A stretch of DNA of 64,000 bases from the NCBI GenBank assembly GCA_002269645.1, contig NIVC01000214.1:7559-71558 (forward strand), given 5' to 3'. Source of the DNA: Macrostomum lignano (taxonomy: Eukaryota). The position numbers and the translations under genes were made by a program. The notes beneath the pieces were generated by a model that did no database searches, was not told the DNA's origin, and saw nothing but the letters and a program-made list of their open reading frames with translations. Of the stretch, positions 161 through 58,484 are shown piece by piece; position 1 is the stretch's first letter, and each line of letters begins with the position of its first letter.

Positions 161-417
161 TTCCTGTCCGCTGAGTTTATCCGTCTCCTTTTTCACGTCG
201 CCGTATCTAATTTACTGTATGACAGTGTCAAAAATGCACTCCCCAGCAGTTTCGCGGCCGCATTGGAGGGCTCGCTGGGCGGCCAATCCCGCAAGACGAC
301 CCTGCCTGGCCGTGTGCAGTGCGGCCTATAAAAACCGATGGTTTCTGAAAGTCCCGTCCCGAATTGCGACGAAAACAGACGAGCAGCGCGCTGACCCGAG
401 CGAGCCAGCAGCTCCGA

Positions 418-1602
418 ATGGGCAACACAACAAATGCGCAGTGCACGGATCACTCTCTGCCGGAGTCTCCCCTAGTAGCGATCGGTTCTCTGGCTTTCTA
501 CTCCACCCTGGGCGTGCTCGGACTGTTCGGCAACATCCACGTCATCCTCGTGTTCGCCTCCAGTCGGGAGAAGAGTCTGCGCTTCCTCATCACGGTACTG
601 TCGGCCATGGATCTGTTTATATCGGCAGTGGTGCTGCCCACCGACTGCTACCGGGTGTACAATGACTACCTGGCCAGCAAGTACGAGCTGAAGGCCACTA
701 ATCACTGGTTCAGCACCGTGATTCTGTCGTCCAGGTATGCGGCGTTCGAGATGGAGGCCTGGATTCTGGTATTCATCGCAGTGGACCGCTACCTGTGCAT
801 CGTGAAGGCCAGTCAGCAAGGCCTTACCTACAAGAAGACCCTATGCGCCCTGTTCGCCGCCGCGCTGAGTCTTCTGCTCCTAGAGGTGTGCAACGTGACA
901 AGCCACTACCTAATTGAAGACCAGTGCGGCCTGAAGCTCCAGCTGGAGTCCTACCTGCTGTACTTCTACGGCGCACTCGGCACCCTGTCAGTGCTGGTTG
1001 TCATGTCGCTTTATATCAGAATTTTCACCTTCGTGGCCTCCATGGAGAGGCGGCGCAGTTCGAAGCGCAAAGTCACCAAGCAGACGCTGGCGCTGCTGTC
1101 CAGGGCGGACGAAGTCGGCGCGACCAGCAACTGCGGGGACCTCGGCGGCGGTGGCGACGGCGCTGGCGACAAAAATCTTCAAGGTACCGCCAGCTACGCT
1201 TTGGAAACATCTTTAAAACCGACCAGCTGCTCGCTTCAGGTGACAGCCGACGGTCCAACCGGGTTTAACGGCATCTCCGAGTGTCCCAGCAGCAGCTTCG
1301 TCAGCAATGCGCTGCCGCCGCAGTCGGCGACCGCCGCCGCCGCCGCTGCCGCCGCCACCACCGAGTCATGGTTCCCCAAGAAGCTGGCCTGGATGCTGTT
1401 CGGCGCCACCGTGCTGTTCTACGGCAGCATGCTGCCGATGATCCTCATCAACTTCAAGCTGCTGCCGGACTCGCCGCTGCACCGCATTTTCTATTTGAAC
1501 ACGTCGCTGAACTTTTTCGTCTACGCCATGATGAACTCGAAGTTCAGAGAGGAGCTGCGCAGAATTTACAGCAGGGCCTGCAGGTGCCGCTGCGAGCAGT
1601 GA
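418..1602 (+). CDS. Intronless class A (rhodopsin-like) GPCR, divergent/orphan, 394 aa
   Basis: ATG at 418 (MGNTT, N-glycosylation sequon). Seven hydrophobic segments with GN (TM1), LSAMDL (TM2), AVDRY (TM3), LPMI (TM6) and NTSLNFFVYAMMNSKFR (TM7/H8), a long ICL3 and a Cys-rich C-tail. GC-rich codon usage. Confidence 0.9.
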   Translation: MGNTTNAQCTDHSLPESPLVAIGSLAFYSTLGVLGLFGNIHVILVFASSREKSLRFLITVLSAMDLFISAVVLPTDCYRVYNDYLASKYELKATNHWFSTVILSSRYAAFEMEAWILVFIAVDRYLCIVKASQQGLTYKKTLCALFAAALSLLLLEVCNVTSHYLIEDQCGLKLQLESYLLYFYGALGTLSVLVVMSLYIRIFTFVASMERRRSSKRKVTKQTLALLSRADEVGATSNCGDLGGGGDGAGDKNLQGTASYALETSLKPTSCSLQVTADGPTGFNGISECPSSSFVSNALPPQSATAAAAAAAATTESWFPKKLAWMLFGATVLFYGSMLPMILINFKLLPDSPLHRIFYLNTSLNFFVYAMMNSKFREELRRIYSRACRCRCEQ

Positions 1603-8979: not shown

Positions 8980-9280
8980 TTAATAATAATAATAATTGAT
9001 TACAACTGCCCTAATGGCCAGATGTGCAACCGACAGCTCAGCCGCAGCTATTGTGCGGCGCATCTGAAGGCTGCGTACGGCTGTTCAGTCCAAGGACTGG
9101 GGGGTCACCACACCCAAAATTACCCCAGCTAATGCTGGCACCCATTTTACAGCTGTGTGAACTGAAGCAACGCAGAGTTAAGTGTCTTGCTCAAGAACAC
9201 AAAGTGTTCCAGTGGGATCAGGAATCGAACCCCCGACCTTTAAGTCGTGAGTCTGACGCTCTAACCACTAGGCTGCAACA
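8980..9280 (-). mobile_element. tRNA-derived SINE with CORE-like central domain and (ATT)n tail
   Basis: Minus strand has an A box (TAGTGGTTAGAG) and a B box (GGTTCGATTCC), then TGTGTTCTTGAGCAAGACACTTAACTCT...TTCAGTTCACACAGCTGTAAAATGGG (resembles the MIR/CORE domain) and an (ATT)n tail. TCTGCA direct repeat at 8974-8979 and 9281-9286. The anticodon stem does not pair, so it is not a functional tRNA. Confidence 0.85.
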
Positions 9281-11062: not shown

Positions 11063-11290
11063 GGGCCGTAGCCCAGTGGTCTAGCGCGACACTCCTGTGT
11101 ACCAGCGGCCAGGTTCGATTCCCAGGCCCAGTCGCACTAATTTCGGGCTCAATTGGAGTCTCAGCTTGGCTCTGCTTGTGCAAGTAACGTCATTGAAGGC
11201 CAACCCCAAGGCGCAGTGAAGTGTACATGACTAACGATAAAGGGCCCAAGACAGGCTGACAGGTACTGTCAGCCTGACTCATTATTTACT
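11063..11290 (+). mobile_element. Second tRNA-derived SINE family, intronic and antisense to the host gene
   Basis: GGGCCGTAGCCCAGTGGTCTAGCGCG (A box) and GGTTCGATTCCC (B box), followed by a non-tRNA body, a 3' hairpin and a short AT-rich end. The body differs from the SINE at 8980. Confidence 0.75.
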
Positions 11291-15860: not shown

Positions 15861-16131
15861 AATATGCAGTCCAGATGAGAAGTCTTTAAAGAAACCAATT
15901 TCGAATATCTTGTTTATGAATACTTGAAAAAATATCATAATTTTTTGTTGGCTCACTAATTAGAAACAAAGTTTTAAATTTGTTTGCGTAAAACAGGTAC
16001 AACTGTGTGTCTGCAGTGAATTTTGTTGTCAATCTGAGCTAACAAATATTAGTTGCTATGAAAACTGGCTATCCAACAAGCATATGGTATTGTACTATTT
16101 CTGTTAGTTGAAGCTGTAAAACACTAAAAAG

Positions 16132-16527
16132 ATGTCAGCATCAGCGGCTTCGCTGAGCAGCCAGCGCCAGCGAGTGCTCAGCCTGTACCGTCAGATCCTT
16201 CGTTTGGCCAGGCAGTGGCCTGGCCGGCCAGGCGTGGCAGACCCGGCCACGGAGGCGGCCTACATCCGGACAGAGGCTGGCACCCTGTTCCGCCAGCACA
16301 AGTCTTTGTCAGACCCGGTCGTCATCGAGTCTCACATTGCGGAGGCGGAGTCGCGCATTAATTTGGCTCTGCACTACAATATCCCATATCCGCGCATGCC
16401 AAATTTGCCGCCTGGTTGCTTAGCAACGCCCGGCCAGCCGAAGCGTCGGACAGCCCGCGGCATGGACGACGCCCTGCCGGCTTATATGAAAAGCTACAAA
16501 TCCGGCTACGCGCCTAAGATCAAGTAG
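16132..16527 (+). CDS. LYRM1: LYR motif-containing protein 1 (mitochondrial LYRM family), single coding exon, 131 aa
   Basis: VLSLYRQILRLARQW LYR motif, YIRTEAGTLFRQHKSL and LALHYNIPYPRM match the LYRM1 pattern (LYRxIFRLARKW...YIxxEARTLF...GLHYKIPYPRP). Confidence 0.93.
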   Translation: MSASAASLSSQRQRVLSLYRQILRLARQWPGRPGVADPATEAAYIRTEAGTLFRQHKSLSDPVVIESHIAEAESRINLALHYNIPYPRMPNLPPGCLATPGQPKRRTARGMDDALPAYMKSYKSGYAPKIK

Positions 16528-16801
16528 TATTTGAGCAGCCGTTGCTGAACTTGAGATAGCGGAATTTGACTGCTTATTTAGTGACAGCAACTTGCTTGTT
16601 TGATGTACTTTTGCGATTTCCGAGTTCGAGTTTGATGCCCTAATAGCTCTGAGCTTCATCGGCCTTTTTAACCTTAAAAATCGCTCCCCGCATTATTCCA
16701 GAATCACATTTGAGCTTCATAAATCAATAATCAATAATTGCTTTTCATCGCCCTGAGAAACGGCTTTATAATCATAAAAAAATAGCCCTTCATCGCCCTT
16801 A

Positions 16802-17163
16802 AGAATCGCCCTCCATCATCACCAAGAATCGCCCTCCATCATCACCAAGAATCACCCTCCATCATCACCAAGAATCACCCTCCATCATCACCAAGAATCA
16901 CCCTCCATCATCACCAAGAATCGCCCTCCATCATCACCAAGAATCACCCTCCATCATCACCAAGAATCACCCTCCATCATCACCAAGAATCACCCTCCAT
17001 CATCACCAAGAATCACCTTCCATCATCACCAAGAATCGCCCTCCATCATCACCAAGAATCACCCTCCATCATCACCAAGAATCACCCTCCATCATCACCA
17101 AGAATCACCTTCCATCATCACCAAGAATCGCCCTCCATCATCACCAAGAATCGCCCTCCATCA
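16802..17163. repeat. 23-bp minisatellite (AAGAATCACCCTCCATCATCACC)
   Basis: Direct inspection. Confidence 0.95.
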
Positions 17164-18089
17164 TCATCTCTCCTCGAGCATTGCCATTTGTAACGGGCAT
17201 TTGTAAATTGAATAAATAAAATTGTTTGACTCTGAACTTTGTTTTTCATATTAAACAACACATTTTCGTCTATTTTGCTTACTTTTCTATTTGTAGTAGT
17301 ATAGTAGAATCGCTTTAGGATTTTAATTCGATTGTCATTCAACCGCGAGCAACCCCGCGCAGCCACAAAGGTGGCAGCCTAAATAGGCACGCGCACGCAC
17401 CAACGCACCCACCACCCCACCAGACAGCCAGCACCCAAACAGCCCCCCTTGCACTAACAGCGGTTAGCCCTCGCGGGCTCGCGCAAACCGATGCACTATC
17501 GCGTAGTTATACAAGCAGCACAAGCTGGCCTAAGAGCCTAGAAAATATTCGGTCAACTTCCTGTAGGATATACGACTGAAAATATTCTGCAACTTGTATC
17601 AAATGAATAAACGATTTTAATAAAAAATCTGCTCTTACCAGCTCGTAGTAAAAAGGAGTATAAATTAGGATATTGGAAATCACCTGTCTGTCTCGCGGGT
17701 TTGTCGAAAATGATTTATTAGTTAATATCCTCTGGCAAGTGTTGCTTTCGTGTGTTTTCCATTTCACTCTTGTTGGTTGTTCAGTTCATTTCCTGCCGCG
17801 CTTCTTCTTGGATGAGGAAGGGCAGCCGCGGCTGCTGGGAGCTATAATTAGATTACTTTGAGCGATGAAGCACCGAGCGAGCGTGCAACCTAGCCTAGCT
17901 CGGGTCTGTTTATGTGGGCTGACAAATGCTTTTTGCTTAATAACATTCGCTTGCGTAAGCGGAATTTCTTGTTTTTTTTCTTGTGCAAAAAAATGTAACT
18001 TAAAAAAACAGGGTGATTTTTCGCGCAAAAAAGTTGGCTAGGGCTTCTAAGAGATGTTTCTTTAGCTTTTCTAGGCTTTCTTAGCTGAT

Positions 18090-18160
18090 TCTTTGCGGTT
18101 TTGAACGCGTCCGATTCTTGCATTAGGGTTCTCTCGGGTTCGATTCCTGCCGCGTGCTCA
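18090..18160 (+). promoter_or_regulatory. Pol III B box (GGTTCGATTCC at 18137-18147) in a degenerate tRNA-like head
   Basis: Exact B-box consensus; the A box is degenerate. Confidence 0.5.
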
Positions 18161-18184: not shown

Positions 18185-18466
18185 CAACTGATTAACTGAC
18201 TGACTAACTAACTAACTGACTGACTAACTAACTGAATAACTAACTAACTGACTAACTAACTAACTGACTGACTAACTAATTAACTAACTGACTAACTAAC
18301 TAACTAACTAACTGACTGACTAACTAACTGAATAACTAACTAACTAACTGACTAACTAACTAACTAACTAACTAACTGACTGACTAACTAACTGAATAAC
18401 TAACTAACTGACTGACTAACTAACTGACTAACTAACTAACTGACTGACTAACTAATTAACTAACTG

Positions 18467-18497
<31 letters not shown>

Positions 18498-18900
18498 GAC
18501 TGACTAACTAACTGAATAACTAACTGACTAACTAACTAACTGACTGACTAACTAATTAACTAACTGACTAACTAATTAACTAACTAACTAACTAACTAAC
18601 TGACTAACTAACTAACTGAATAACTAACTAACTAACTAACTAACTAACTGACTAACTAACTAACTGAATAACTAACTAACTGACTAACTAACTAACTGAC
18701 TGACTAACTAATTAACTAACTGACTAACTAACTGACTAACTAACTGACTAACTAACTGACTAACTAACTAACTGAATAACAAACTAACTGACTAACTAAC
18801 TAACTGACTGACTAACTAATTAACTAACTGACTAACTAACTAACTGACTGACTGACTAACTAACTGACTGACTAACTAACTGACTAACTAATTAACTAAA

Positions 18901-18937
<37 letters not shown>

Positions 18938-18956
18938 GACTAACTAATTAACTAAA

Positions 18957-18993
<37 letters not shown>

Positions 18994-19008
18994 GACTAAC
19001 TAACTGAA

Positions 19009-19051
<43 letters not shown>

Positions 19052-19218
19052 TTAACTAAATAACTAACTAATTAACTAACTAACTAACTGACTAACTAAC
19101 TAACTAACTAACTGAATAACTAACTGACTAACTAACTAACTATCTAACTAACTAACTGAATAAATAACTAACTAACTAACTGACTGACTAACTAATTAAC
19201 TAACTAATTAACTAACTG

Positions 19219-19249
<31 letters not shown>

Positions 19250-19316
19250 GACTAACTAACTGACTAACTAACTAACTAACTGACAGACTAACTAATTAAC
19301 TAAATAACTAACTAAT

Positions 19317-19365
<49 letters not shown>

Positions 19366-19463
19366 GACTGACTGACTGACTGACTAACTAACTGAATAAC
19401 TAACTGACTAACTCACTGAATATCTAACTAACTAACTAACTGACTAATTAACAAAATAACTAG

Positions 19464-19509
<46 letters not shown>

Positions 19510-19514
19510 GACTG

Positions 19515-19545
<31 letters not shown>

Positions 19546-19616
19546 GAATAACTAACTGACTAACTAACTGAATAACTAATTAACTAACTAACTAACTAAC
19601 TAACTAATTAACTAAA

Positions 19617-19649
<33 letters not shown>

Positions 19650-19662
19650 GACTTACTAACTG

Positions 19663-19701
<39 letters not shown>

Positions 19702-19762
19702 GAATAACTAACTAACTAACTAACTGACTGACTAACCAATTAACTAACTAATTAACTAACTG

Positions 19763-19809
<47 letters not shown>

Positions 19810-19978
19810 GACTAACTAACTGACTAACTAACTAACTGACTGACTAACTAACTAACTGACAGACTAACTAATTAACTAAATAACTAACTAACTAACTAAC
19901 TAACTAACTGACTGACTAACTAACTGACTAACTAACTGACTAACTAACTGACTAACTAACTAACTAACTAACTAACTG

Positions 19979-20009
<31 letters not shown>

Positions 20010-20024
20010 GACTAACTAACTGAA

Positions 20025-20067
<43 letters not shown>

Positions 20068-20234
20068 TTAACTAAATAACTAACTAACTAACTAACTAAC
20101 TAACTGACTAACTAACTAACTAACTAACTGAATAACTAACTGACTAACTAACTAACTATCTAACTAACTAACTGAATAAATAACTAACTAACTAACTGAC
20201 TGACTAACTAATTAACTAACTAATTAACTAACTG

Positions 20235-20265
<31 letters not shown>

Positions 20266-20332
20266 GACTAACTAACTGACTAACTAACTAACTAACTGAC
20301 AGACTAACTAATTAACTAAATAACTAACTAAT

Positions 20333-20373
<41 letters not shown>

Positions 20374-20471
20374 GACTGACTGACTGACTGACTAACTAAC
20401 TGAATAACTAACTGACTAACTCACTGAATATCTAACTAACTAACTAACTGACTAATTAACAAAATAACTAG

Positions 20472-20525
<54 letters not shown>

Positions 20526-20632
20526 GACTGACTAACTAACTGACTAACTAACTAACTAACTGAATAACTAACTGACTAACTAACTGAATAACTAATTAAC
20601 TAACTAACTAACTAACTAACTAATTAACTAAA

Positions 20633-20665
<33 letters not shown>

Positions 20666-20678
20666 GACTTACTAACTG

Positions 20679-20717
<39 letters not shown>

Positions 20718-20778
20718 GAATAACTAACTAACTAACTAACTGACTGACTAACCAATTAACTAACTAATTAACTAACTG

Positions 20779-20829
<51 letters not shown>

Positions 20830-20900
20830 GACTAACTAACTGACTAACTAACTAACTGACTGACTAACTAACTAACTGACAGACTAACTAATTAACTAAA

Positions 20901-20933
<33 letters not shown>

Positions 20934-20974
20934 GACTGACTAACTAACTGACTAACTAACTGACTAACTAACTG

Positions 20975-21005
<31 letters not shown>

Positions 21006-21064
21006 GACTAACTAACTAACTGACTGACTAACTAACTAACTGACAGACTAACTAATTAACTAAA

Positions 21065-21101
<37 letters not shown>

Positions 21102-21200
21102 GACTGACTAACTAACTGACTGACTAACTAACGCTAGTTAATTAAATAACTAACGAACCAACTAACTAAATTTGACTAACTAAAAAACTAGCTGACTGAC
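18185..21200. repeat. About 3-kb (ACTA)n/(ACTG)n satellite with a ~1.01-kb higher-order duplication
   Basis: Rare variants recur at offsets of 1008-1016 bp (e.g. ACAAAATAACTAGC at 19451 and 20459). Confidence 0.95.
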
Positions 21201-21202
21201 CA

Positions 21203-21272
21203 ACTGTGGCCACGGTGCGGAATCGAACCTGGGAGCCCTGACGCAACGGTCTATACGCGCTACCACCCCAGT
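21203..21272 (-). promoter_or_regulatory. Degenerate tRNA-like/SINE head with A box (TGGTAGCGCG) and B box (GGTTCGATTCC, 21219-21229)
   Basis: Read on the minus strand; the T-stem does not pair, so it is not a tRNA gene. Confidence 0.6.
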
Positions 21273-21289
21273 CCTCTTAGTTTCTACAG

Positions 21290-21676
21290 CAAGCGCACAT
21301 CGCACTTCTGGAATTCCAGTCGCAATCCGGGCAGACGCACCAGCCGGACGAAGCCGCGAACTGGGAGGCGGTGGACGAGCGGCTGCTGCACGTCGAGCAC
21401 GGCGGCCTGCTGCTGGCCGGCGGCGGCGGCTGCCGCGTCTCCGGCCTCGACTCGGCGGCGCCGCGGCTTCAACAGGGCCGGCTGGATCTGCGCGGCCGCT
21501 ACAAAGACGCCGCTGGCACCGTGATGTACTTTGAGCTGTTGGACGCCGGGGAAGGCGCCGCCGGTCCAACATGTCGGCTGGTTGGCCAGACGGAGAAGCT
21601 GCTGCTGGTGGAGCCGCCTATGCAGAGCAAATCAGTGCTGGGCAGGACGGCAGCTCGCGATAAGGCGGCCAACTGA
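21290..21676 (+). CDS. GTF3C6: General transcription factor IIIC subunit 6-like (TFIIIC35) exon; no in-frame ATG at its 5' end
   Basis: After the acceptor TTTCTACAG the frame reads QAHIALLEF...CRVSGLDSAAPRLQQGRLDLRGRYKDAAGTVMYFE...CRLVGQTEKLLLV. This parallels the GTF3C6 core (LVLVELSG...CKVLGIDTERPILQVDSCVFAGEYEDTLGTCVIFE...YKCHTMKKL). Stop TGA at 21676. Confidence 0.8.
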   Translation, partial: QAHIALLEFQSQSGQTHQPDEAANWEAVDERLLHVEHGGLLLAGGGGCRVSGLDSAAPRLQQGRLDLRGRYKDAAGTVMYFELLDAGEGAAGPTCRLVGQTEKLLLVEPPMQSKSVLGRTAARDKAAN

Positions 21677-21739
21677 TGAATTCAAAGAGTATTTATAAGA
21701 GTATTTAATGGGAGAATTGCTAAGGGCAGTAGATTTTCC

Positions 21740-21960
21740 ATTGACTGGTTGGGGAGAATTTTCCCATAGATTAATTGGGGAGATTTTTCCCATAGACTAA
21801 TTAGGGAGATTTTTCCCATAGACTAATTATGGAGACTTTTGCCATTGACTAGTTGGGGAGATTTTTGCCATTGACTTATTGAGGATATTTTTGCCCTTTG
21901 ACTAATTAGGAAGATTTTCCCATTGACTGGTTGGGTAGGTTTTTCCCATAGACGGGTTTC
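21740..21960. repeat. Degenerate ~26-bp repeat (GGGAGATTTTTCCCATAGACTAATT)
   Basis: Direct inspection. Confidence 0.75.
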
Positions 21961-22374
21961 AGTTTGTTTAGTTTAGTAAATTTTCCCCACAGTTGTATAT
22001 TCTCTTGTCATTTGTCACTTTGCTGTTTTTGCTTTCGAGTTTATAGACTCGTAATTAGTGTTCGCTTTGTACGTTGAAATGTGTAAATATATTATAATTA
22101 TTGTACAGTACATTTAGTGCAGAGTTGAGCACTTCTATACATGTGCTTTCCGAGTTAAAATGCAAAACATGTCTCCATATTGTTCCTATTCATTTTCTTT
22201 ACTGTAATCTGCCCTTAGAATAGGACAGCCAAACAGGTCTGCATCTACTGGCGCTGCAGCTGCTTACCTTTCATTGGATGTCCTATTTATTTAGCGGTAC
22301 CAATTATCCTGGCATGGCTAAATATTGCAACCTAAGAATGCGGTCATATCTAATAATCCGACTCAGAGATTCGC

Positions 22375-23770
22375 TTCCGACTCCGCCCCTCTCAAAAATC
22401 GCATCCAAATCCGCGCCTCTCAAAAATCGCATCCAAATTCGCTCCCTCCCAAAAATCGCATCCAAATCCGCCCCTCTCAAAAATCGTATCCAAATCCGCC
22501 GCCTCTCAAAAATCGCATCTAAATCCGCCCTCTCAAAAATCGCATCCAAATCCGCCCTCTCAAAAATCGCATCCAAATCCGCCCCCTCTCAAAAATCGCA
22601 TCCAAATCCGCCCCCTCTCAAAAATCGCATTTAAATCCGCCCCTCCCAAAAATCGCATCCAAATCCACCATCTCCCAAAAATCGCATCCAAATTCGCTCC
22701 CTCTCAAAAATCGCATCCAAATCCGCGCCTCTCAAAAATCGCATCCAAATCCGCCGCCTCTCAAAAATCGCATCTAAATCCGCCCTCCCAAAAATCGCAT
22801 CTAAATCCGCCCCCTCTCAAAAATCGCATTTAAATCCGCCCCTCCCAAAAATCGCATTTAAATCCGCCCCTCCCAAAAATCGCATCCAAATCCACCATCT
22901 CCCAAAAATCGCATCCAAATTCGCTCCCTCTCAAAAATCGCATCCAAATCCGCGCCTCTCAAAAACCGCATCCAAATCCGCCGCCTCTCAAAAATCGCAT
23001 CTAAATCCGCCCTCCCAAAAATCGCATCTAAATCCGCCCCTCTCAAAAATCGCATCTAAATCCGCCCCCCTCTCAAAAATCACATCTAAATCCGCCCCCC
23101 TCTCAAAAATCACATTTAAATCCGCCCCCTCCAAAAAATCGTATCCAAATCCGCCCCCTCCCAAAAATCGCATCTAAATCCGCCCCCTCCCAAAAATCGC
23201 ATCCAAATCCGCCCCCTCTCAAAAGTCGCATCCAAATCCACCATCTCCCAAAAATCGCATCTAAATCCGCCCCTCCCAAAAATCGTATCCAAATCCGCCC
23301 CCTCCTAAAATCGCATCCAAATCCGCCCCCTCCCAAAAATCGCATCTAAATCCGCCCCCTCTCAAAAATCGTATCCAAATCCGCCCCCTCCCAAAAATCG
23401 CATCTAAATCCGCCCCCTCTCAAAAATCACATCTAAATCCGCCCCCTCCCAAAAATCGCATCCAAATCCGTCCCCTCCCAAAAATCGCATCCATATTCGC
23501 CCCCTCTCAAAAGTCGCATCTAAATCCGCCCCTCCCAAAAATCGTATCTAAATCCGCCCCTCCCAAAAATCGCATCTAAATCCGCCCCCTCCCAAAAATC
23601 GTATCTAAATCCGCCCCTCCCAAAAATCGTATCGAAATCCGCCCCTCCCAAAAATCGCATCTAAATCCGCCCCCTTCCAAAAATCGTATCCAATTCCGCC
23701 CCTCTCAAAAATCGCATCCAAATTCGCCCCCTCTCAAAAGTCGCATCGAATCCAAATCCACCCCCTCCCC
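22375..23770. repeat. About 25-28-bp minisatellite (AAAAATCGCATCCAAATCCGCCCCTCTC)
   Basis: Direct inspection; accounts for the ORFs at 22278-23345. Confidence 0.95.

Positions 23771-25137: not shown

Positions 25138-58484
<33,347 letters not shown>

What the first reader, a model, noticed from the sequence alone, without database searches (positions are those of the whole stretch)
21281..21676. GTF3C6 has no start codon of its own: the spliced leader may donate the initiator AUG
Seen: the conserved domain starts immediately after a phase-0 acceptor (TTTCTACAG|CAA GCG CAC), an in-frame TAG lies just upstream, and the first in-frame ATG is deep inside the domain. A second acceptor 9 nt upstream is also in frame. 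Known: flatworm spliced leaders end in AUG, which has been shown in Schistosoma to serve as initiator Met. Inference: the mRNA reads SL-AUG-CAA..., giving a 129-aa protein whose translation depends on trans-splicing.
Basis: partly seen in the sequence, partly recalled or inferred. Interest (0 to 1): 0.7.

Follow-up and report, generated by a model that had tools for sequence, protein, structure and literature searches.

The report
Flatworm GTF3C6 gene lacking own ATG
A small, conserved RNA polymerase III factor gene (GTF3C6) of the flatworm Macrostomum lignano has no start codon of its own ahead of its conserved part, and probably borrows the AUG at the end of the trans-spliced leader, a trick already known from schistosomes; no RNA evidence could be reached here.

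Summary
The window is Macrostomum lignano (GCA_002269645.1, contig NIVC01000214.1). The sequence facts hold. An in-frame TAG sits at 21278-80. A strong acceptor (CTACAG|CAA, 21289|21290) fits the published M. lignano trans-splice motif. The open frame runs to TGA at 21674-76. The first ATG in any frame is at 21524. The protein is a GTF3C6/TFIIIC35 orthologue.

One detail is wrong: the conserved domain starts 24 codons after the acceptor, at Trp (21362), after a non-conserved leader predicted to be disordered. The "second in-frame acceptor" is trivial, because in-frame CAG (Gln) codons create such sites.

The M. lignano leader ends in ATG, so trans-splicing at any of five phase-0 AGs gives an in-frame AUG. 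Three genomic copies share the stop, the acceptors and the ATG-less exon. The transcript-based GenBank annotation gives only 5'-partial proteins (113 and 105 aa) with no upstream exon.

The one rival cis exon (17865-17954, GTAAGC donor) looks non-coding and is within chance expectation, but it is not excluded.

Verdict: spliced-leader AUG initiation is the best explanation (about 0.55) and is unproven. It would be a new member of a known kind. Interest is modest.

The parts
21278..21280 (+). In-frame TAG stop that closes the reading frame upstream. Its AG (21279-80) is also a possible phase-0 acceptor.
   Evidence: Identical in all three genomic copies.
21266..21289 (+). Pyrimidine-rich tract ending in the acceptor CTACAG (21284-89). 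It is the best 3' splice site and fits the M. lignano trans-splice motif [T/C]TNCAG.
   Evidence: motif from PMC8629364. Identical in three copies.
21290..21361 (+). 24-codon leader (QAHIALLEFQSQSGQTHQPDEAAN). It is open, has no ATG, is not conserved among orthologues and is predicted disordered. GC at codon positions 1/2/3 is 0.75/0.38/0.75, in register with the domain.
   Evidence: The only variant among the three copies of the exon lies here (21312, A/C, Glu/Ala).
21314..21319 (+). Second [T/C]TNCAG acceptor (TTCCAG|TCG), also phase 0.
21332..21334 (+). CAG immediately before 21335, the first codon (ACG, Thr16) of the 113-aa 5'-partial protein annotated for this copy. It is either an alternative acceptor or the ragged 5' end of a transcript model.
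21362..21673 (+). Conserved TFIIIC subunit 6 (GTF3C6/TFIIIC35) triple-barrel region, from Trp25 to the last codon.
   Evidence: Pfam PF10419 matches residues 47-106. Invariant columns from W25 on. Human GTF3C6 8clk_F is the only PDB hit. No variant among the three copies.
21524..21526 (+). First ATG in any frame after the acceptor (in-frame Met79). Starting here would drop most invariant residues.
21674..21676 (+). TGA stop codon.
17865..17954 (+). Rival: a candidate cis exon that runs from an ATG for 30 codons (MKHRASVQPSLARVCLCGLTNAFCLITFAC), in phase 0.
   Evidence: GC3 is 0.47 against 0.73-0.83 in neighbouring coding sequence. Shuffles give such a candidate in 27% of cases. Identical in three copies. 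Absent from the annotated proteins.
17955..17960 (+). GTAAGC, the only GT[AG]AG donor on the + strand between the LYR gene and the acceptor.
18193..21169 (.). (TAAC)n microsatellite of about 3 kb that fills most of the outron, intron or intergenic space. It is about 1.06 kb long in copy L001 and about 2.0 kb in copy L005.
16132..16527 (+). Upstream same-strand single-exon gene for an LYR-motif protein (131 aa). It may be the first gene of a two-gene transcription unit.

Best explanation
The single coding exon of M. lignano GTF3C6 is the 5' exon of an SL trans-spliced mRNA. The most likely acceptor is CTACAG|CAA at 21289|21290. The phase-0 AGs at 21280, 21319, 21334 and 21343 may also be used.

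The 35-nt spliced leader (...TTATTGCATG) is joined to the exon, and its terminal AUG becomes codon 1. This gives M-QAHIALLEF...AAN, 129 aa, with the conserved Trp at residue 26. Use of a downstream acceptor would give a somewhat shorter product.

The pre-mRNA would come either from a promoter upstream of the (TAAC)n array or from read-through from the LYR gene, as in an operon.

Shown: the sequence anatomy, the gene identity, the leader sequence and acceptor motif (from the literature), and the 5'-partial annotation. Inferred: that trans-splicing occurs here and that the leader's AUG is the start actually used.
For: 1. No ATG in any frame lies between the in-frame TAG (21278) and 21524, while the family's invariant residues lie upstream of 21524. 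The start must therefore be supplied from outside the exon or be non-AUG.
2. The M. lignano SL ends in ATG and is followed by GTAAG. The trans-acceptor motif is [T/C]TNCAG, and CTACAG fits it. 45.3% of human-conserved genes are trans-spliced (PMC8629364).
3. The leader's AUG is a proven initiator in S. mansoni. It is in frame in 28% of trans-spliced transcripts, and more than 40 cDNAs need it (PMC9851317). PMC10468722 calls the Macrostomum SL's final ATG a translation start codon.
4. Gene calls for this assembly are GenBank PAA/BOX15_Mlig proteins derived from transcripts.
   - Two copies of this gene are annotated as 5'-partial proteins (113 and 105 aa) with no upstream exon.
   - The annotation pipeline trimmed the SL and mapped reads end to end (PMC5730564). 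That would leave exactly this kind of truncated, ATG-less model.
   - A calibration gene shows that partial coding sequences begin at the 5' end of the transcript model.
5. The TAG, both acceptors and the exon are identical in three genomic copies. There is 1 variant in 396 nt, against about 3-5% in the flanks. This is neither an assembly error nor a decaying pseudogene.
6. The only consensus-donor cis candidate has no coding signature and encodes a hydrophobic, Cys-rich peptide unlike the acidic N-termini of orthologues.
7. With the donated Met, Trp is residue 26, as in the Taenia solium orthologue.
Against: - No SL-containing read, cDNA or peptide was available. M. lignano RNA-seq is not in the searchable collections.
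- The annotated partial proteins start at 21335 and at the equivalent of 21359, not at 21290. They differ between copies, so they do not mark one defined SL site.
- A consensus donor (GTAAGC, 17955) lies upstream in a block that varies little among the three copies (17700-17967, 4 variable sites in 268 nt). If the primary transcript includes it, cis-splicing would be expected to win.
- The leader's AUG has a weak context (U at -3, C at +4).
- The acceptor motif and pyrimidine tract do not tell trans-acceptors from cis-acceptors.
- The repeat-adjusted distance to the LYR gene (about 0.9-1.4 kb) is at or above the 1-kb operon criterion of PMC8629364.
Confidence: 0.55

Rival explanations
1. Ordinary cis-splicing. 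Transcription starts upstream of 17865. Exon 1 (the ATG at 17865 through 17954) is spliced from the GTAAGC donor across a 3.3-kb intron that holds the (TAAC)n array, to the acceptor at 21289. The product is a 158-aa protein, MKHRASVQ...TFAC-QAHIALLEF...
For: - This is the only GT[AG]AG donor in the 4.75-kb interval, and it is in phase 0 with an open frame from an ATG.
- The ATG has a purine at -3.
- The exon is identical in three copies and sits in a block that varies little among them.
- By the rule quoted in PMC8629364, an upstream donor in the same transcript favours cis- over trans-splicing.
Against: - Shuffled sequence gives at least one such phase-0 candidate in 27% of trials.
- GC3 is 0.47, flat across codon positions, against 0.73-0.83 in the LYR and GTF3C6 coding sequences.
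- The peptide is hydrophobic and Cys-rich, like a signal or membrane segment. That is unlike the acidic leaders of orthologues and unexpected for a nuclear factor.
- Two transcript-based annotated models lack this exon and are 5'-partial. The 158-aa product is not in the 15-billion-protein collection.
- A TATA-like TATAAT at 17842 would place the transcription start at or beyond the ATG (inference).
Confidence: 0.22
2. Non-AUG initiation on an mRNA whose 5' end lies near the exon, trans-spliced or not. Translation would begin at a near-cognate in-frame codon in the leader: ATC 21299, CTG 21308 or ACG 21335.
For: In-frame near-cognate codons exist upstream of W25. The annotated partial protein happens to start at the ACG. 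Non-AUG starts are documented in SL organisms (PMC9851317).
Against: The contexts are weak (C at -3 for CTG and ACG). Non-AUG starts as the sole start of a housekeeping gene are rare (general knowledge). If the mRNA is trans-spliced, the SL's AUG lies upstream and in frame, and scanning ribosomes would meet it first.
Confidence: 0.08
3. The locus does not make a full-length protein. It is a recently disabled gene copy family, or only the 50-aa product from Met79 is made.
For: There is no start codon in the exon. One of the three copies is not annotated at all.
Against: - The exon is almost invariant among three copies while the flanks differ by 3-5%.
- All family-invariant residues are retained upstream of Met79.
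- No other GTF3C6 homologue from this genome turned up in two whole-database searches, so this is probably the organism's only GTF3C6.
Confidence: 0.05

Closest known systems
Schistosoma mansoni mRNAs that take their initiator Met from the 3'-terminal AUG of the spliced leader (Cheng, Cohen, Ndegwa & Davis 2006, J Biol Chem 281:733; cited in PMC9851317 and PMC12582326). The general class is called 'slORFs' (PMC9851317).
   Same: It is a flatworm SL ending in ...GCAUG. The acceptor is in phase with an open frame that has no AUG of its own before the conserved part, so the predicted protein depends on trans-splicing.
   Different: The species is a free-living macrostomorph. Here neither trans-splicing at the site nor use of the AUG is shown experimentally. 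In S. mansoni both cDNAs and reporter assays exist.
SL trans-spliced genes and operons of Macrostomum lignano (Wudarski et al. 2017, PMC5730564; Ustyantsev & Berezikov 2021, PMC8629364).
   Same: Same organism and assembly. The acceptor fits [T/C]TNCAG. The gene is conserved and of housekeeping type, the class enriched for trans-splicing. A same-strand upstream gene lies at a repeat-adjusted distance of about 1 kb.
   Different: Those papers do not discuss genes that need the leader's AUG, and no SL-read evidence for this gene was reachable. The raw intergenic distance (4.8 kb) is far above the typical 100 bp within operons.
GTF3C6 / TFIIIC35 (Pfam PF10419, TFIIIC subunit triple-barrel domain; human structure 8clk chain F).
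   Same: The family's invariant positions are kept (W-E, G, D-S..P..Q.G, G.Y.D..GT..F). The protein is small (about 130 aa, like the fish orthologue P0006). The N-terminal leader is short, variable and disordered.
   Different: Sequence identity is low (27-38%). The Pfam score is only just above the cut-off. Orthologues, including the flatworm Taenia solium (P0129), have their own genomic ATG. The leader here is not acidic.

Membership tests
GTF3C6 / TFIIIC_sub6 (PF10419) | Match to the family profile above the curated threshold. | tested here: met
   24.0 bits against a cut-off of 22.7, E=3.8e-5, residues 47-106. This is marginal, but library hits P0004-P0006 score 55-82 bits on the same family.
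GTF3C6 / TFIIIC_sub6 (PF10419) | Conservation of the family's invariant residues, and closest relatives named GTF3C6. | tested here: met
   16 invariant columns are shared with 27 orthologues. Named GTF3C6 proteins dominate the hits. The only PDB hit is human GTF3C6 8clk_F, E=0.04.
GTF3C6 / TFIIIC_sub6 (PF10419) | Beta-barrel fold. | tested here: inconclusive
   The AlphaFold2 model has mean pLDDT 57. Beta strands at 33-107 reach pLDDT 65-80, and residues 1-32 are below 50. The model is too weak for a fold search.
SL trans-spliced gene of M. lignano | RNA reads or cDNAs that carry the 35-nt SL joined to the exon at an AG acceptor. | not testable with these tools
   No M. lignano transcript contigs are in the collections. 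No per-gene table was found in the papers or held supplements.
SL trans-spliced gene of M. lignano | [quoted passage not shown] | tested here: met
   CTACAG at 21284-89 and TTCCAG at 21314-19. The motif is from PMC8629364, where it is present at 44% of SL sites. It is not specific against cis-acceptors.
SL trans-spliced gene of M. lignano | No usable splice donor upstream in the same primary transcript. | tested here: inconclusive
   One GT[AG]AG donor lies at 17955, 3.3 kb upstream. Whether it is transcribed with the gene depends on the unknown transcription start.
SL-AUG-dependent ORF (class of Cheng et al. 2006) | The leader ends in AUG directly at the splice junction. | tested here: met
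   The SL is CGGTCTCTTACTGCGAAGACTCAATTTATTGCATG, followed by GTAAG in the SL RNA gene (PMC8629364). This comes from the literature, not from this window. No SL copy is in the window.
SL-AUG-dependent ORF (class of Cheng et al. 2006) | The acceptor is in phase with the open frame, no stop follows the junction, and there is no AUG of its own upstream of the conserved region. | tested here: met
   Five of 7 AGs are in phase 0, and the first ATG in any frame is at codon 79.
SL-AUG-dependent ORF (class of Cheng et al. 2006) | Translation shown to start at the leader's AUG (reporter, ribosome footprints or N-terminal peptide). | not testable with these tools
   No such data are held.
Operon (polycistronic unit) of M. 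lignano | Same-strand neighbour, downstream gene trans-spliced, and repeat-adjusted distance below 1 kb. | tested here: inconclusive
   The LYR gene is on the same strand. The distance from its stop codon to the acceptor is 4762 nt, or about 1419 nt after removing the two tandem arrays. It falls to about 0.9-1.1 kb if the LYR mRNA ends after the AATAAA at 17211 (inference). Trans-splicing is unknown.

The most novel reading that the evidence does not exclude
The ATG-less GTF3C6 exon lies 60 nt downstream of a perfect TFIIIC-binding B-box (GGTTCGATTCC, 21219-29, minus strand). A second B-box (18137-47, plus strand) sits on the far side of the (TAAC)n array. These tRNA-derived fragments might act as 'extra TFIIIC' sites through which TFIIIC regulates the gene for its own subunit, as reported from memory for yeast TFC6. 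Translation would in addition depend strictly on trans-splicing.
Probability: 0.04. Interest if true: 0.6.

Novelty: new member of a known kind. Interest (0 to 1): 0.3.

Why it matters
If confirmed, this is a clear case in a free-living model flatworm of a conserved housekeeping gene whose protein can only be made after trans-splicing. It would extend the schistosome observation to Macrostomorpha.

The practical value is for annotation. The M. lignano pipeline trimmed the whole leader, ATG included. Genes of this type therefore appear in GenBank and UniProt as 5'-partial fragments (here 113 and 105 aa, and one copy unannotated), although the mRNA may encode a complete protein. A systematic re-reading of 5'-partial models that begin at SL sites could repair many entries.

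It does not open a new mechanism.

Tried and rejected
1. Transcript evidence. Two whole-database protein searches found only the two genome-annotated fragments. Exact look-ups of eight possible products (MQAH..., MFLQQ..., MKHR... and others) found none. The neighbouring LYR protein is found only on genome contigs. M. lignano RNA-seq assemblies are therefore not in the collections.

2. Literature and supplements for a per-gene record (GTF3C6, Mlig025865, Mlig027324): nothing. Cheng et al. 2006 is not held.

3. Conservation between genomic copies as a way to find a hidden upstream coding exon. The three copies are too alike (95-97% in alignable flanks) to discriminate.

4. tRNA gene or SINE call for the GC-rich piece just upstream of the acceptor. 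ARAGORN found none. Rfam found none, even at E<=1. Only the B-box motif is solid.

5. An SL RNA gene in the window: none.

6. The antisense ORF 21180-21572 (130 aa, Arg/Pro/Ala-rich) was judged a by-product of the GC-rich exon.

7. A phase-1 alternative: ATG 17912...17954 joined to the AAG|CG acceptor at 21293. It is possible on paper but the acceptor is poor.

8. A fold search was not run, because the model is of low confidence.

Full report
**Origin of the window.** The protein fragment encoded at the finding is annotated on two contigs of assembly GCA_002269645.1. One fetched locus (L002, contig NIVC01000214.1) is 100% identical to window 11335-31676. A paralogous neighbour protein carries the GenBank name 'hypothetical protein BOX15_Mlig025865g1 [Macrostomum lignano]'. 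The window is therefore Macrostomum lignano, assembly Mlig_3_7. The gene calls returned for it are the GenBank proteins derived from the transcript-based annotation of Wudarski et al. 2017 (PMC5730564).

**The observation.**
- Reading 21230-21679 in frame gives ...S S * F L Q | Q A H I A L L E F ... K A A N *.
- The TAG is at 21278-80, and the sequence continues TTT CTA CAG | CAA.
- The acceptor AG is at 21288-89, and CAA begins at 21290.
- The TGA stop is at 21674-76. There are 128 codons from CAA.
- The only ATGs in the exon are at 21524 (in frame, codon 79), 21571 (frame 2) and 21620 (in frame). For 234 nt after the acceptor there is no ATG in any frame.
- A second AG (21279-80), 9 nt upstream, is in phase 0. 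It is the AG of the TAG itself.

**Gene identity.**
- Pfam gives one family above its threshold: TFIIIC_sub6, PF10419, 24.0 bits against a cut-off of 22.7.
- An exhaustive HMMER search of 1.84 billion representatives returns three clear TFIIIC_sub6 proteins, apart from the window's own fragment and a stretch of an unexamined 2470-aa protein (P0003).
- A profile search returns hundreds of proteins named 'general transcription factor 3C polypeptide 6'.
- The only solved structure matched is human GTF3C6, 8clk chain F.
- Sixteen columns are invariant across 28 sequences, starting with W25-E26.

The conserved part does not start at the acceptor.
- NWEAVDERLLHVEHGG aligns with DEWEEEEQLVVVELSG of vertebrates and with DEWEVVNDTLVYADCVG of Taenia solium.
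- The 24 codons from 21290 to 21361 are a non-conserved leader.
- AlphaFold2 gives pLDDT below 50 for residues 1-32.
- The leader does show the same GC pattern over codon positions as the domain: 0.75/0.38/0.75 against 0.78/0.50/0.83. That fits translation but is weak evidence at this length.
- The 'second in-frame acceptor' is not remarkable. Of the 7 AGs between the TAG and W25, five are in phase 0, and four of these are in-frame CAG glutamine codons.

**Why a start codon is nonetheless missing.** All family-invariant residues from W25 to T77 lie upstream of the first ATG and are retained. Translation must therefore start upstream of 21362. Between the TAG and 21362 there is no ATG. The start must come from a spliced-on sequence or be non-AUG.

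**This is not an error or a dead gene.**
- Three genomic copies exist: the window, L001 on NIVC01001844.1 and L005 on NIVC01000753.1.
- They have identical TAG, acceptors and exon, with one variant in 396 nt (21312 A/C, Glu/Ala, in the leader).
- Alignable flanks differ by 3-5%, and the repeat arrays differ in length.

**What is known about the organism.**
- M. lignano has one 35-nt spliced leader, CGGTCTCTTACTGCGAAGACTCAATTTATTGCATG, followed by GTAAG in the SL RNA gene.
- 30% of genes and 45.3% of human-conserved genes are trans-spliced.
- The top motif at trans-acceptors is [T/C]TNCAG.
- Operons were defined by a repeat-adjusted spacing below 1 kb (PMC8629364).
- CTACAG (21284-89) fits the motif, as does TTCCAG (21314-19).
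- That a flatworm leader's terminal AUG can serve as initiator was shown for S. mansoni. It is in frame in 28% of trans-spliced transcripts, and more than 40 cDNAs need it (Cheng et al. 2006, as summarised in PMC9851317; also PMC12582326).
- A Macrostomum genome paper calls the final ATG of the leader a 'translation start codon' (PMC10468722).
- The mechanism is therefore known. Only its use by this gene would be new.

**Indirect RNA-based evidence.**
- The GenBank proteins for this gene are 5'-partial. P0002 (113 aa, window copy) starts at Thr16 (ACG, 21335, right after GGGCAG). P0001 (105 aa, L001 copy) starts at Asn24. The third copy has no annotated gene.
- A calibration case is a GPCR paralogue whose partial protein begins at the equivalent of window 373, about 43 nt after a TATAAAAA box and not after an AG. 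It shows that such partial coding sequences begin at the 5' end of the transcript model.
- Two independent transcript models thus begin inside this exon, and neither has an upstream exon.
- The pipeline trimmed leaders and mapped reads end to end. That would erode the 5' end of a trans-spliced exon and remove the ATG.
- This fits the hypothesis and speaks against a cis-spliced ATG exon. However, the two models end at different places, so they do not define the acceptor.

**The rival cis exon.**
- Between the LYR gene and the acceptor, only eight ATG-to-GT combinations are open and in phase 0.
- Only one has a consensus donor: 17865-17954 followed by GTAAGC. That is also the only GT[AG]AG on this strand in the interval.
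- Dinucleotide shuffles of the non-repeat sequence give at least one such candidate in 27% of trials.
- Its GC3 is 0.47 with no codon-position pattern.
- Its peptide (MKHRASVQPSLARVCLCGLTNAFCLITFAC) is hydrophobic and Cys-rich.
- It is absent from the annotation.
- On the other hand, it is identical in all three copies and lies in a 268-nt block with only 4 variable sites. That block may be a promoter or first exon. A donor within the primary transcript would favour cis-splicing.
- I give this rival about 0.2.

**How the pre-mRNA might arise.**
- The space upstream of the acceptor holds about 120 nt of unique sequence, then a 2977-nt (TAAC)n array (18193-21169). Before that lie about 1 kb of unique sequence, a 23-nt minisatellite (16801-17166) and the single-exon LYR-motif gene (16132-16527, same strand).
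- Without the two arrays, the LYR stop codon is about 1.4 kb from the acceptor. From a likely LYR poly(A) site after the AATAAA at 17211 the distance is about 1 kb.
- That is borderline for the published operon criterion. Both an operon and a separate promoter remain possible.

**Comparison with other flatworms.**
- The Taenia solium orthologue (P0129) has its own ATG and a 25-residue leader, with Trp at residue 26. That is the same position as in the M. lignano protein with a donated Met at 21290.
- It lies 97 nt downstream of a Tim29 gene on the same strand.
- A second, probably flatworm, transcript (P0005) also has its own ATG.
- Dependence on the leader's AUG, if real, is therefore not conserved across the phylum.

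**Verdict.**
It rests on anatomy, literature and an indirect reading of the annotation, not on a junction read.
- Probabilities: SL-AUG initiation at one of the phase-0 acceptors 0.55, cis exon 0.22, non-AUG start 0.08, no full-length product 0.05, other or unresolved 0.10.
- It would be a new member of a known kind. Interest is modest (0.3), mainly as a pointer to a systematic annotation artefact in this model organism.

Noticed in passing
window 18193-21169: A (TAAC)n microsatellite of 2977 nt (744 units, 86% matches) sits between the LYR gene and GTF3C6. Its length differs among the three genomic copies: about 1.06 kb in L001 and about 2.0 kb in L005.
   Followed up: partly
window 9221-9231 (-), 11112-11122 (+), 18137-18147 (+), 21219-21229 (-): The Pol III B-box consensus GGTTCGANTCC occurs four times, always as GGTTCGATTCC, against 0.07 expected. 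It lies in tRNA-like fragments that neither ARAGORN nor Rfam calls as tRNA. Two of them flank the (TAAC)n array in inverted orientation, and one is 60 nt upstream of the GTF3C6 acceptor. The B-box at 21219 is mutated in copy L001 (GGTTTGATTCC).
   Followed up: partly
window 16801-17166: A 23-nt minisatellite (AAGAATCACCCTCCATCATCACC, 16 copies) lies just downstream of the LYR coding sequence, probably in its 3' UTR. Copy L001 has far fewer units.
   Followed up: partly
window 17339-17495: A GC-rich insertion of about 157 nt is present only in the window copy and absent from L001 and L005.
   Followed up: no
window 21677-23000: No AATAAA or ATTAAA occurs within 1.3 kb downstream of the GTF3C6 stop codon. 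The stop is followed by a 26-nt tandem array (21734-21953) and a 29/57-nt array (22371-23747, 48 copies). The 3' end of the mRNA is therefore unclear.
   Followed up: no
window 35958-39498: A 3.5-kb pure polypyrimidine array (19-nt period, CTCTCTCCTCTCTTCCCTT, about 193 copies) has GC skew and AT skew near -1. It is followed by a 21/139-nt array at 39934-40645.
   Followed up: no
window 373-1599 (+), TATA box at 328-335: A single-exon G-protein-coupled-receptor-like gene. Its paralogue is annotated in GenBank as a 5'-partial 409-aa protein (PAA77293.1), although an in-frame Met lies 16 residues in. This shows that 'partial' calls in this annotation reflect ORFs open to the end of the transcript model.
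   Followed up: partly
window 16130-16134: The ATG of the LYR-motif gene is directly preceded by an AG (ctaaaaag|ATG). If that AG were a trans-splice acceptor, the leader's AUG and the gene's own AUG would be adjacent and in frame.
   Followed up: no
L006 1845-3490 (Taenia solium MIEF01007743.1): The tapeworm GTF3C6 orthologue lies 97 nt downstream of a Tim29 gene on the same strand. This is an operon-like spacing.
   Followed up: no
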